Shown: one piece after another, positions 17,428 to 27,707 of the stretch
How the letters are laid out: the number at the start of each line of letters is the position of its first letter
How positions within the stretch are numbered: position 1 is the first letter of the stretch
Assembly (NCBI GenBank): GCA_964106645.2
Contig: OZ067041.1
Strand: one strand, 5' to 3'
Source: Podarcis pityusensis
Lineage: Eukaryota
DNA: 64,000 nt
Position numbers and translations under genes: made by a program
The notes under the pieces: model-generated
Database searches by the model: none
The model's input: only the letters and a program-made list of their open reading frames with translations
Told to the model about the DNA's origin: nothing

Positions 17428-17585
17428 GTGAGAGTGCAGCAACTGGAACTATTGCTGGCTGTTTGTATGGCTTGCTTTATGGGCTCAACAAGGTCCCTAA
17501 AGGCTTGTACCAGGATCTTGAACAGAGGGAGAAGCTAGAAAACTTGGGAGAGGCTCTCTTCCGACTGTCTTCAGAGGAAAAGTAA
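17428..17585 (+). CDS. ADPRHL1: ADPRHL1 exon 7, to the stop codon of the short (~354-aa) isoform; ends at 17581 in the long isoform
   Basis: tttacag|GT. Translates [52 protein letters not shown]. Exons 2-7 total 851 nt; with a 214-nt exon 1 this gives 354 aa. Confidence 0.97.
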
Positions 17586-18045
17586 AGATGTTTTTGCCAT
17601 TTCATTTTATTTTTAAAAAGATTATATTATACCCTGCAGCCAAATTCCTAAGAAGCAACTCTAAACAGATTTGTAAAAATTCAGGAAAAGAATTGTCTGC
17701 CCCTAAGTCTCAGTGAAGTCACACTGTCTTTAACATGATGTTATTTTATTCATTTACTCTGAAGTACTCCCACTACTCCACAGATAGGAGTTTCTTGACC
17801 CGACATAAGGGCCAGTCCACACATTACATTTTTGTTAGCAAATATAGGGACAGAATTAGCTGCAGCTAAGTGTACATTGGGTTGCAAATCTATATTTCCA
17901 TGTAATGTGTGGAAAACTCCCAAACTATGCCAATATTGTTGCAGGCAGCATTATAAAATGCTGCGCAGAGGTAGAATAGTAGAATTATACTATTAAATTT
18001 ATTGTAAGCCGCTCCAATAATTTATTTGAAGAAAAGGGTATAGTA

Positions 18046-18051
18046 AATAAA
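18046..18051 (+). terminator. Candidate polyadenylation signal for the short ADPRHL1 isoform
   Basis: AATAAA about 460 nt after the exon-7 stop; positional inference only. Confidence 0.3.
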
Positions 18052-23158: not shown

Positions 23159-23290
23159 TAAAAATAAAAAATAAAGCGGTATATAATCTTGTTTAATAAA
23201 TATAAACACATTAAAACCAGTAAGGAAGTAAAAGCAATGTTGATGACTTTCCCTGGACAAAAACAACAACATTCGTTTTCTTTTATGCAG

Positions 23291-26200
23291 CAGAAGTAAA
23301 GGTACAAAGCTGGGCAGTGATAAGGTGCTGGTTGACCCCATAGTGCTGAAGAAGAAGCTCAGTAAGATGTCCACAGAACTAGGTGCATTTGCTGTCCTCA
23401 GCAGCCTTCTACTTTACCTCACAGACCTCCTATCCAGCCGACCCCAGGTCGAGAGCAAGAAGGCCAAGTGGCTCGAAGGGATAGAGAACAAGGTGAACTC
23501 GAGGCGCGAATGCCATAGCGCACATGGCGGCATTCGTCCCACCAAATTCCAGCTTCTGCAATCGAGGTTCATGAACAACAACCGCGAGGCCTACAGGAAA
23601 AGGTCGAGAGAGGTTGGCAAGCTGGTCGTTAAAGAAAAGCAGAACAGAAATGGGCTAAACTCCATTGTAAGCAAGCTGGACAAAAGCTCCTCAAAAGAAG
23701 GAGAAAGCCCAGAGATAACACCCCACGATAAAGTCAAATGGGTCTGCTCAACTGGGAAAAATACTGTGAAGAATATCCTGAAGAAATTCTTAGTTGCTGA
23801 GGAAAAAGAAGCTAAAGAAAGAGAAAAGCAGGTGGCTCCAAAAAAGAAGACCCCAAACGATAACCTGCCCAAGATAATCAACAAAAACTCTGTCTTGTCC
23901 AAACTGAAAGAAAAGTTTGAACAAAGCAGTAATATCTGTTCAGCCATTGAGGTGAAATCTTTGCTGCCGCGCAAAGGCGAGAGAAAGAGCAAAAAAGGCC
24001 CAGAGAGAAAAAAGATTTGCAAACCTGAAATAAGAGTGCTTGAAAGGAAACTAAGGACAACCACAATTGTCAACAGCCCTCAGCCTCAACAGCTGGTATT
24101 CACAACTGTCCCTACACCTAAATTCTGTGTTGCTACTGAAATTAGTCACCCTTGGAGCTGGGCTACAAATGCCAAGTCCGCCACTCAGCCTTCTGAAGTG
24201 GGGAGGCCAAAAGACACCCAGAAAGCACCTGGCATTGGGTCGCATGACAGCAAGATACCAGAAAGCATGACACATAAAGGGCAACTAGGAGGACAGTTGC
24301 AAAACAAGCATCATGAAATGCCTAAGGTGGTGGCTGACAAAAAGGACATTGTCAAGAGTAATGTAACTCCTACAAGCCCAGGTTCTAATCAAGACAGTGT
24401 TCTTCCTTCACGTGAAAATGTGTCCCTTGTTGATTGCATTCCTCCTTTATCTAAGGACAGCTTAGATCACAAAGAGAACATCATACCGCCTGTGGATGAT
24501 ACCTTTTCCAGGTCCAGAGACAAAAATGCAGCAAAAATCATGAGCAGAGAAAACATACCTACTAACGACCTCTCTTCTAATCCAGCTGAAGGAGTTCATG
24601 TACATAGTCACCAGGAAATGAAAGAGGATGGGATTCCTGGCATACCAGAAGGCATGTTCAGGCCAAAGGAGACAGAAATAGAATTAGCAGAGCCTATAAA
24701 AGATCCCCCATTCACCAGCCAAAAATGTTTCTCTGAAAAGAAAGTGTTGGAAAATATTCCACCATTTCTCTCTCCTGTAGCTCAGGCATCTTGTAACAGA
24801 GAGCCTCCAATAAAGGACCAGCAATCAAGTGTTGAACCTGCAGCTGTTCACAAAATGCCTCCGCTTAAGCCAAGTCAAGATAACGCACAAAGTTTGGGGA
24901 GCACATTTTCTGACACGGTTCAGAACAAAGAGAAGCTGCCTGATAAGGAGGAACTATTTCCTAGCCTTAACAAAAGCGACCATGCGGGTAAAGCAAAAAA
25001 GGGAGTGCTACAGCCATCGAGAAGCCAAGGTGAGCCATCTGATCAACAGGCAGAAAGGGAGCATTTGCCCAAGGAGCCACAATCACATCCAAAGCTGAGC
25101 CAACAAAATAACCCTAGCTCAAACATATCAAAACAGACTTTAGATCAACCACACCAAACTCCTACTTCAAATAGGAGCCAGAAAGACAACAATGATTTAA
25201 AAGGAAATGATTTTGAAAAAGAGCTTTGCCCTTTGACTGGCGATTTAGATAAATCCAGCTGTGTTAGAGCAGCAGAGAATACTAGCAAAGCTGAACTGCG
25301 CTCAGATAATGAAAAGACAAATTCTGAAAACAAGAGCAAAAAGGGAAATAGTAGCTTGAGCCATTTGGATACCTCTCAGAGGCTGCCGGAAGAATTCATC
25401 AGACACGAAACTGGCAATCTGGAAAAGAATCCTACACCTCCTTTTCAAAAATCTCACTCATCCTCACTAACCGACTCAGCAAATCCAGAAGGCGATACTC
25501 CAGAAGTCGACAGACCTTGGTGCAGTGTTGGAAACCTCCAAACCCCAACATCAAATGCAGTGAAAAAGAAAGAGAGCTGTATTGTAAGAGATAATGCAGC
25601 CAGTCCTAATTCTGAGAAACACCACTTCCCTTCTCCAGCTGAATTGCTGAAGCCCAAGGGGGCACCTGGGCAAGACAGCAAGCCAACAACAAGCAATTTG
25701 TGCAATGATTTAATTAAGAGTGAAAACCATGCTGTAGAAGTTGAGGGTATGAGTCCCCAGACCAGGAAGTATCAACCAGCCTCAACAAAGGAGACTAGAA
25801 AGCGTGAAATTAGTCCTGTAGGGGAGGCAAGCCCCGCGCACAATGTGGAGAAGCAGCAGGTGCCCTTAGGAAACAAAACTGGGAAGCAGGAAAGCATAAA
25901 AGTGATGGCAGAAGTAAAGCCTGAGAAAAGCGGATTTCCCTCCCCAAATGAAACAGTAAAGCAGGGGAACAGTGAAGGAGGAGAAAGAAATCTACTGAAA
26001 GAAGTACAATGTCTAATTCCATCATCTGTTGACAGAAAGGGGCAAGATGATAAGGTAACAGAAGAGAAAAACTCTATAGTGGGAGGTAAGAAGTTGGTGC
26101 GTAACTCCAATATGCCCCAGAAATTAATAAAAAGTGACCTTGCAGAGGGTGGTGGTGAAAGAGCAGGTTCACAGCAGCTGACCCCACCAAAGCATAAACC

Positions 26201-27707
26201 TAGCAGGCCGGGAGTGTTACCTTCCCCAGATAACTCAAAATGTCAAACACCATCAAGAGATCCAGAAAAAGGTGGAACTGTTGCATCAAAAGATGAAAAC
26301 GCTGCAAAACACCAGCTCTCCACACTCAAAGAACCAGTGAAGTGTGATGATAATGCTAACCAAAGAAATGCCCAGGATAGCCTTAAGACTAAGAGTGACA
26401 AAATACCATTATCTGGCAAGAAAGTGAAACCTGAAAGCAAATTGGGGAAGACGAAAGAGAACACTAGTAATTCTGGGCAAAACCAGTTACCTTTGGAAAA
26501 TGAACTTCCAAAGAGTAAAAAGGCTGAGCCAATGAAACCTGCAGCAGAGAAGTCACAGAAACCATCTTTAGATGACTCTAGAAATGGACTTCCAAAGAGT
26601 AAAGAGACTACTGTAAGCAAATTGGGGAAGACAAAAGAGAACACTAGTAATTCTGGGCAAAACCAGTTACCTTTGGAAAATGAACTTCCAAAGAGTAAAA
26701 AGGCCGAGTCAATGAAACCTGCAGCAGAGAAGTTACAGAAACCATCTTTAGGTGACTCTAGAAATGGACTTCCAAAGAGTAAAGAGACTACTGTAAGTAA
26801 ATTGGGGAAGACAAAAGAGAACACTAGTCATTCTGGGCAAATCCCGTTACCTTTGGAAAATGAAGTTCCAAAGAGTAAAAAGGCTGAGCCAATGAAACTT
26901 GCAGCAGAGAAGAAACCATCTTTAGATGACTCTAGAAATGAACTTCCAAAGAGCAAAGAGACTACTGTAAGGGAGAGAGGTACTTTGTGCAACCTTAAGG
27001 AACATCAGATACCAGCACCAAATGAATCAAAGACTGAGCCAGTAAATCTTGCAGCAGGGGAGCCGCAGAAACCATCCTTGAATGACTCTAGAAACCATGA
27101 GGATATTGCTAAGAATGAAAAACGGGCTTCATGGAATTCTAAGAACCAGCAGCTACCCTTATCAGATGTGAAACAGGAGAGCCATCAATATAGTGTCACA
27201 GCAGGGAAACAGCAGCAGCAACCACAACCACCAAAGGATTATGTCAAGCCTAAATCTAGTATAAGAGATGGAAAGCATATGCATCATAAATCAGAGAAGT
27301 ATCGTCTTCCTGCCTCAGATGAACTGGGAGTGCATGAAAAGAATGCTAGTGAAAGGAAGGGTTCCTTGGCTCCACTTTCAAGTCACGATAGGACCATGCA
27401 AAAGAAGAAAACACTATGTGAGACTGATACTGGTCCCAAATTGGGCTCACCGAACAAGACATGTCCTGCAGAACAGAGAAAACCACAGCGTAGTCCTCCT
27501 GGCAAGTACCAAACTCTGTCAGCAAATGTGCTATCAGAGCAAGGAAGTGGGGAATCTCAAAAGCTCGGGGCTGATGCAATAAGTCAGAAAGCTAGATCAC
27601 TAGCCTTGGAAAAATACATAGCAGAAAGCTACAGTGAAGAACTAGTACCTTTGTCTATTAAACCAATGGTTGTTCGTGTGATTGATACAATTAAGCTTGA
27701 TAACTAA
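23291..27707 (+). CDS. ADPRHL1: ADPRHL1 giant terminal exon 8 (long isoform; 1,471 codons of extension)
   Basis: Polypyrimidine tract plus tgcag| at 23290. Exon-7 AA + C restores the frame of the 1,460-aa ORF (23325-27707). The N-terminal part (AVLSSLLLYLT, RPTKFQLLQSRF, KNTVKNILKKFLVAEEKEAKE, SVLSKLKEKFEQ) matches my recollection of the human long ADPRHL1 isoform. Confidence 0.88.
26436..26969 (+). repeat. Coding tandem repeat, 180 bp (60 aa) x3, plus a degenerate partial fourth copy at ~27030-27095
   Basis: Units start at 26436, 26616 and 26796 (SKLGKTKENTSNSGQNQLPLENELPKSKKAEPMKPAAEKSQKPSLDDSRNGLPKSKETTV). The third has an in-frame 6-bp deletion. Confidence 0.95.

What the first reader, a model, noticed from the sequence alone, without database searches (positions are those of the whole stretch)
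17571..27707. A stop codon that doubles as a splice donor switches ADPRHL1 between ~354 aa and ~1,825 aa
Seen: exon 7 ends GAG GAA AAG TAA, and the same bases read AA|GTAAAG as a 5' splice site. Using it removes the stop and joins in frame (AA+C = Asn) to a 4,417-nt terminal exon 5.7 kb downstream, adding 1,471 codons without interruption in a TE-rich neighbourhood. Recalled knowledge: human has an annotated but little-studied ~1,967-aa isoform built the same way. Inference: the switch is an amniote-wide conserved mechanism in which splicing competes with intronic polyadenylation, turning a compact pseudoenzyme into a large scaffold. The 1,825-aa total assumes a 214-nt exon 1.
Basis: partly seen in the sequence, partly recalled or inferred. 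Interest (0 to 1): 0.8.

Follow-up and report, generated by a model that had tools for sequence, protein, structure and literature searches.

The report
Known long form of lizard ADPRHL1
A lizard heart gene can either stop at exon 7 or splice on to a very long last exon; this long form is already annotated from fish to mammals, and its one unreported feature is a set of short, highly conserved motifs that may bind actin filaments.

Summary
Observation confirmed. In this Podarcis ADPRHL1 (ARH2) gene the TAA at 17583-85 overlaps a GT donor at 17582. Exon 8 (23291-27707) adds 1,471 open codons under purifying selection (dN/dS 0.38-0.49; 20 of 20 indels keep frame). It is not new: a 1,826-aa P. 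lilfordi model is 98.8% identical, and PMC7390403 describes exon 8 in vertebrates, including Xenopus. The donor and tail reach frogs and teleosts, so 'amniote-wide' is too narrow. The overlap needs no special design: all six donors in the window carry TAA or TGA at +2 to +4, and intron 7 is the only phase-2 intron. Best reading: a composite terminal exon (weak donor, conserved AATAAA at 18641). The 17581-23291 junction was not seen in four contig sets, though one spliced contig leaves the genome exactly at 17581. Regulation is untested, and exon 8 may also be transcribed alone. Unreported in the papers searched: three conserved helical motifs resembling the VxxLxxxFE F-actin motif, and a conserved C-terminal motif. 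Binding is untested. The scan had not noted this gene on other DNA.

The parts
1044..1208 (+). ADPRHL1 exon 2 (exon 1 lies upstream of the window)
   Evidence: AG/GT bounds and open frame; matches P0001
7523..7648 (+). exon 3
   Evidence: Pfam PF03747, E 6.7e-07
11046..11186 (+). exon 4 (skipped in some Podarcis models)
13887..14014 (+). exon 5
16300..16432 (+). exon 6, with the ARH2-specific di-arginine loop
   Evidence: loop described in PMC7390403
17428..17581 (+). exon 7 up to the internal donor
   Evidence: contig X5 record 9 stops aligning at 17581
17582..17587 (+). weak phase-2 donor GTAAAG; letters 17583-85 are the stop codon of the short form
   Evidence: same hexamer in platypus, bat, crane, finch, turtle, frog
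17586..18660 (+). 3' UTR of the short form (end inferred)
   Evidence: read-through contigs in runs X1, X6, X7
18641..18646 (+). AATAAA, likely poly(A) signal of the short form, inside intron 7
   Evidence: conserved with its T-rich downstream stretch in crane and turtle
21622..22041 (+). conserved non-coding block in intron 7, role unknown
   Evidence: 67-75% identical in turtle, crane and finch
23288..23293 (+). tandem CAG-CAG acceptors (exon starts at 23291 or 23294, both in frame)
   Evidence: NCBI isoform pairs differing by this one residue in P. muralis, Zootoca and Varanus
23291..27707 (+). exon 8 coding part, 1,471 codons plus stop
23382..23426 (+). conserved hydrophobic helix (tail residues 31-45)
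23547..23573 (+). motif 1, FQLLQSRFM; F1, L4, F8 invariant in 51 tetrapod rows
23766..23792 (+). motif 2, VKNILKKFL; V1 and F8 invariant in 51 rows
23895..23921 (+). motif 3, LSKLKEKFE; closest to VxxLxxxFE, F8 and E9 invariant in 51 rows
26431..26971 (+). three tandem 180-nt (60-residue) repeats; 1-3 copies among lacertids
27612..27689 (+). conserved C-terminal motif (KY..S(Y/F)S...KP...R..DT)
   Evidence: tetrapods, teleost-like hits 28 of 34

Best explanation
This is the ordinary ADPRHL1/ARH2 gene with a composite terminal exon. If U1 does not use the weak phase-2 donor at 17582, the frame meets TAA at once and the RNA is cut at the conserved poly(A) signal about 1.06 kb into intron 7, giving the 354-aa pseudoenzyme. 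If the donor is used, exon 7 joins exon 8 at one of two tandem acceptors and gives a protein of about 200 kDa: the ARH2 fold, a conserved basic block with three amphipathic helices that resemble short linear F-actin-binding motifs, a long fast-evolving low-complexity spacer, and a conserved C-terminal motif. Shown: anatomy, conservation, selection, RNA across the short UTR and on exon 8, departure of a spliced contig at the donor. Inferred: the 17581-23291 junction in this species, competition as the control (about 0.7), F-actin binding by the tail (about 0.5).
For: Anatomy. 98.8% identity, no gaps, to an annotated 1,826-aa P. lilfordi protein. AA|GT donor at the same place and phase with an in-frame acceptor in platypus, bat, crane, turtle, frog and croaker. 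Annotated one-residue acceptor pairs in three lizards, which normally rest on spliced reads (the link to reads is my knowledge of the NCBI pipeline, not checked). Invariant L19 and K20 and near-invariant D15 lie upstream of the first Met of exon 8 in this lizard (residue 26), so they need an upstream exon. Conserved AATAAA. dN/dS 0.23-0.28 in the first 270 codons; 20/20 frame-keeping indels against 17/47 in the intron. About 100-kDa Adprhl1 species in tadpole gut (PMC7390403). Motif definition from PMC13364712; strict motif in 29 of 34 deep hits against 6% of shuffles.
Against: Exon-8 contigs of X1 and X7 run across the acceptor into the intron. Many annotations treat exon 8 as a separate gene. 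[quoted passage not shown] The motif pattern is short (a strict match arises in about 5% of shuffles of the block), homologs are not independent, and the AlphaFold model was uninformative (pLDDT 41.5).
Confidence: 0.72

Rival explanations
1. Exon 8 is mainly its own transcription unit, started inside intron 7 and translated from an early Met, giving a 1,450-residue protein without the ARH fold; the fused form is minor.
For: Stand-alone NCBI models with intronic first exons in Rhineura (L005 8001-8076) and zebra finch (L006 8001-8034), and many stand-alone models elsewhere. X7's 5,630-nt exon-8 contig begins near 22,858 with almost no coverage in the 2.8 kb upstream. A conserved non-coding block lies 1.3-1.7 kb upstream of the acceptor.
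Against: The predicted first exons differ between lineages and the Rhineura donor is degenerate in the window. Donor position and phase are kept from teleost to bat, even where the stop moved. Conserved residues lie upstream of the first Met here. Contig assembly drops low-depth joints.
Confidence: 0.2
2. The donor at 17582 is used mostly toward some other exon (inside intron 7 in other lineages, or further downstream), so the locus has more than two outcomes and the long protein is only one of them.
For: X5 record 9 leaves the genome at 17581 with 143 letters that lie nowhere on 17441-23430, and X5 has no coverage of 23241-23430 although it holds 35% of exon-8 words. The finch model splices this donor to an intronic acceptor that again gives K-stop.
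Against: The 143 letters were not displayed; the tool may not lay a skip of 5.7 kb. X5 is another species. One contig only.
Confidence: 0.15
3. The long form is an annotation artefact or splicing leak and exon 8 has no protein function.
For: No junction seen; no Pfam family in the tail; little heart expression in Xenopus.
Against: Frame kept open over 689-1,579 codons from croaker to crane, with motifs at both ends; dN/dS below 0.5 overall and only frame-keeping indels.
Confidence: 0.03

Closest known systems
Vertebrate ADPRHL1/ARH2 with predicted 3' exon 8 (PMC7390403; chicken 8 exons, 1,934 aa, PMC8427608; NCBI lacertid isoforms)
   Same: Same gene, same junction, same tail; 98.8% to the annotated P. 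lilfordi protein, 99-100% coverage of the first 260 tail residues in lacertid models.
   Different: Nothing structural. The papers do not discuss the stop/donor overlap, the poly(A) signal or the tail motifs in the passages read.
Composite terminal exons / intronic polyadenylation (class as in PMC4227790 and papers; IgM, FLT1, LMNA recalled as examples)
   Same: An unused 5' splice site, read-through into the intron, an in-frame stop and an intronic poly(A) signal.
   Different: The read-through form is the well-studied main protein and gains a single residue; the spliced form adds five times its length in one exon. Regulation is not shown.
[quoted passage not shown]
   Same: Hydrophobic P1 and P4, Phe P8, Glu P9 in motif 3; basic, low-complexity setting; deep conservation.
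   Different: P1 is Leu (Val one place earlier) in motif 3; motifs 1 and 2 lack Glu at P9. ADPRHL1 is not named in the paper's text or four held supplements. No binding data.
ARH1 (ADPRH), PDB 3HFW/6G28
   Same: Full-length match of the 354-aa core, E about 1e-95.
   Different: Catalytic SDDT and DSDS are SDNT and ESAA here, and the Ser-Ser loop is Arg-Arg: pseudoenzyme.

Membership tests
ADPRHL1/ARH2 orthologs | ADP-ribosylglycohydrolase domain PF03747 over about 350 residues | tested here: met
   Exons 3 and 6 match singly (exons 4 and 7 more weakly); P0001 E 3.4e-56
ADPRHL1/ARH2 orthologs | Loss of Mg-binding aspartates (Asn58, Glu302, Ala304) and di-arginine loop | tested here: met
   SDNT, GESAA and GRGGRRGH present (residues from PMC7390403)
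ADPRHL1/ARH2 orthologs | Best matches named ADPRHL1/ARH2 | tested here: met
Composite terminal exon / intronic polyadenylation | Internal 5' splice site that is sometimes used | tested here: met
   X5 record 9 leaves at 17581 (related species, RNA status guessed by the tool); annotated junction isoforms
Composite terminal exon / intronic polyadenylation | Read-through RNA ending at an intronic poly(A) site | tested here: inconclusive
   Read-through contigs and a conserved AATAAA at 18641; contigs cannot show RNA ends
Composite terminal exon / intronic polyadenylation | Junction to the downstream exon in the same species | tested here: inconclusive
   No 17581-23291 joint in four contig sets; contigs drop minor joints
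Composite terminal exon / intronic polyadenylation | Ratio set by competition of U1 and the cleavage machinery | not testable with these tools
   needs minigene or U1 experiments
SFM F-actin-binding proteins | P1/P4 hydrophobic, P8 Phe, P9 Glu | tested here: met
   motif 3 (P1 Leu rather than Val); motifs 1 and 2 meet P1, P4, P8 only
SFM F-actin-binding proteins | Helix within a disordered region | tested here: inconclusive
   composition is disorder-like; helices predicted at these places but at pLDDT below 50
SFM F-actin-binding proteins | Conservation of the motif | tested here: met
   F8 and E9 in 51 of 51 tetrapod rows; strict pattern in 29 of 34 deep hits
SFM F-actin-binding proteins | Binds F-actin in the subdomain 1/3 cleft (model with actin, or co-sedimentation) | not testable with these tools
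   no complex prediction or binding assay available

The most novel reading that the evidence does not exclude
Exon 8 encodes an unrecognised multivalent F-actin-binding module (up to three SFM-type helices plus a conserved C-terminal docking motif), kept since the common ancestor of bony vertebrates, which a tissue-specific choice at the exon-7 donor attaches to the ARH2 pseudoenzyme, and which may also be made on its own from intron 7. It would give ADPRHL1 a direct route to actin that current work on the 40-kDa form lacks.
Probability: 0.4. Interest if true: 0.6.

Novelty: already known. Interest (0 to 1): 0.3.

Why it matters
The isoform and its junction are already annotated, so the switch itself teaches little. 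The value is practical: work on ARH2 (heart myofibril assembly, knockout mice, human variants) treats it as a 39-40 kDa protein, while a tail kept under selection from teleosts to mammals has no described function in the papers searched. If its conserved helices bind F-actin, the long form offers a testable link between this pseudoenzyme and actin, and knockouts of exon 1 may leave a stand-alone exon-8 product untouched.

Tried and rejected
AlphaFold of P0001 residues 1-620 with 38 rows gave mean pLDDT 41.5: no fold search was run on it. Pfam finds nothing in the tail. Atlas feature searches gave only weak leads below 0.8 (CRACD-like, KIAA1671, KIAA1210). The profile search of the first 262 tail residues returned 85 proteins. 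All that were named or inspected are ADPRHL1 tails, apart from a few short fragments that were not resolved, so no paralogous family was found. Paper searches for an account of the long isoform found only PMC7390403 and PMC8427608; none for the phase-2 stop effect. The ADPRHL1 fusion in PMC11473313 is with the upstream gene DCUN1D2 and does not bear on this junction. Rejected: the overlap as a special device; a transposon origin of the frame (selection and deep homologs); TATA-like letters in the conserved intron block (missing in crane).
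Full report
Observation. The window holds exons 2-7 of ADPRHL1 at 1044-1208, 7523-7648, 11046-11186, 13887-14014, 16300-16432 and 17428-17581, all with AG/GT bounds. Exon 7 reads GAG GAA AA|G TAA AG, so the G that completes the last Lys codon and the T of the stop are the GT of a donor at 17582. A pyrimidine-rich acceptor 5,709 nt on opens exon 8 (23291-27707), with 1,471 codons free of stops against 31-149 stops in each other frame; the chance estimate is about 1e-39. 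Exon 1 lies outside the window; lacertid database proteins put 72 or 73 residues before exon 2's first full codon.

What it is. The best match is a 1,826-aa protein annotated as ADPRHL1 in Podarcis lilfordi; related models exist in P. muralis, P. raffonei, Lacerta and Zootoca. The core matches ARH1 structures at E about 1e-95 but has the ARH2 substitutions. PMC7390403 states that vertebrate annotations include longer transcripts with a 3' exon 8, that part of it is conserved between Xenopus and mammals, that it is little expressed in the forming heart, and that about 100-kDa species occur in tadpole gut. PMC8427608 gives chicken eight exons and 1,934 aa. So the isoform is known, though unstudied.

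Depth of conservation. AA|GTAAAG is identical in platypus, horseshoe bat, crane, zebra finch, turtle and the frog Mantella, each reading Lys-stop if unspliced. The croaker has AA|GTAATC with the same outcome; shad keeps the donor while the stop lies four codons on. A profile of the first 262 tail residues finds frogs and many teleosts. The arrangement therefore spans bony vertebrates. Exon 8 is coding throughout: dN/dS is 0.49, 0.38 and 0.49 against Rhineura, crane and turtle, 0.23-0.28 in the first 270 codons, and all 20 indels against Rhineura keep the frame, against 17 of 47 in the intron (simple pairwise counts, poor in the divergent middle).

How surprising is the overlap? Not very. All six donors of this gene in the window have TAA or TGA at +2 to +4, as the GTRA consensus implies; the triplet is in frame only when the intron is in phase 2, and intron 7 is the only such intron here. 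What is conserved is a weak donor (mismatches to consensus at -1, +5 and +6) and, 1,055 nt after the stop, an AATAAA at 18641 that crane and turtle keep together with its T-rich downstream stretch. That is the anatomy of a composite terminal exon. Competition between splicing and cleavage is the standard mechanism for this class, but it was not tested here.

RNA evidence. Only assembled contigs of related species were available, and their RNA status is the tool's guess. In X1 and X7 contig depth is several-fold lower beyond about 18,500, which fits the poly(A) signal but cannot place an end. X5 record 9 (1,219 nt) aligns up to exactly 17581 and has 935 letters upstream, the size expected for spliced exons 1-7: the donor is used. 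No 17581-23291 joint was listed; contigs drop minor joints, so this is not absence. Indirect support for the junction: NCBI models of P. muralis, Zootoca and Varanus come in pairs that differ only by Asn-Arg against Lys at the junction, which is what the tandem acceptors at 23291 and 23294 predict.

A rival remains. Many annotations make exon 8 a separate gene, some with intronic first exons (Rhineura, zebra finch). The exon-8 contigs of X1 and X7 extend 330-430 nt upstream of the acceptor, and a conserved non-coding block sits at 21622-22041. Against this as the main product: the first exons are not shared between lineages, and conserved residues lie upstream of the first Met of exon 8 in this lizard. 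Both products may exist.

What the tail may do. Identity across tetrapods is highest in the first 270 residues, in a patch near 450-530 and in the last 35 residues; the rest is rich in Lys, Ser, Pro and Glu and varies in length, including 1-3 copies of a 60-residue repeat among lacertids. The first block has three helical motifs with hydrophobic P1 and P4 and an invariant Phe at P8 in 51 tetrapod rows; the third also has invariant Glu at P9. [quoted passage not shown] Three loose matches arise in 0.3% of shuffles of the block and one strict match in about 5% (pattern chosen after seeing the motifs). The strict pattern persists in 29 of 34 deep, mostly teleost, hits. ADPRHL1 is not named in that paper or its held supplements. 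An earlier scan note on this window (s1-717174) made the same suggestion; I had noted it before reading that note, and it is not independent support. Structure prediction was uninformative. I put F-actin binding at about even odds.

Verdict. A real, selected, already annotated alternative ending; the stop/donor overlap is a by-product of intron phase. Interest 0.3, resting mostly on the untested actin-motif lead.

Conduct and limits. All database and family searches used single exons by reference or database proteins. The 98.8% figure comes from that call; one search gives 99% for the first 260 tail residues without joining. The N run at 11729-11985 (intron 4) was left as it is. No contig was taken for human and no human locus was fetched or searched for. 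Human ARH structures appear among the hits. Great-ape rows and two unlabelled mammalian rows were printed once and left out of later scripts. The large protein search was used once, because the family scan left the tail open and the age of the tail rested on distant relatives.

Noticed in passing
window 17581 (run X5, record 9): A spliced contig leaves the genome at the donor and carries 143 letters that lie nowhere on 17441-23430; the partner exon is unknown.
   Followed up: partly
window 21622-22041: Non-coding block conserved in turtle, crane and finch but not detected in platypus or bat; candidate enhancer, promoter or splicing element.
   Followed up: partly
L006 7919-8034 (zebra finch): An annotated exon inside intron 7 takes the exon-7 donor and again gives Lys-stop (354 aa); the same exon supplies the ATG of a stand-alone exon-8 model.
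   Followed up: partly
L005 8001-8076 (Rhineura); window about 19,880-19,950: Predicted first exon of a stand-alone exon-8 gene; its donor is degenerate in the window. Rhineura's exon-7 donor reads GTAACA.
   Followed up: partly
window 26431-26971: In-frame 180-nt repeat: 3 copies here and in P. muralis, 2 in P. raffonei and Lacerta, 1 in Zootoca; the marker word was not found in the three other lizards checked.
   Followed up: yes
window 23382-23426: Strongly conserved hydrophobic helix just after the junction; it could pack on the ARH fold or a membrane. The model was too poor to tell.
   Followed up: partly
window 11046-11186: Exon 4 (47 codons) is skipped in annotated P. muralis and P. raffonei isoforms.
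   Followed up: no
window about 22970-23150 and 19050-19480: Repeat-like stretches in intron 7 (many unrelated contigs laid there); the first looks like a tRNA-derived SINE by eye.
   Followed up: no
window 33860-35473: GC- and CpG-rich stretch (62% GC in 34001-36000) with overlapping open frames; one frame scanned, no Pfam match.
   Followed up: no
window 11729-11985: Run of 257 N in intron 4; left untouched.
   Followed up: no
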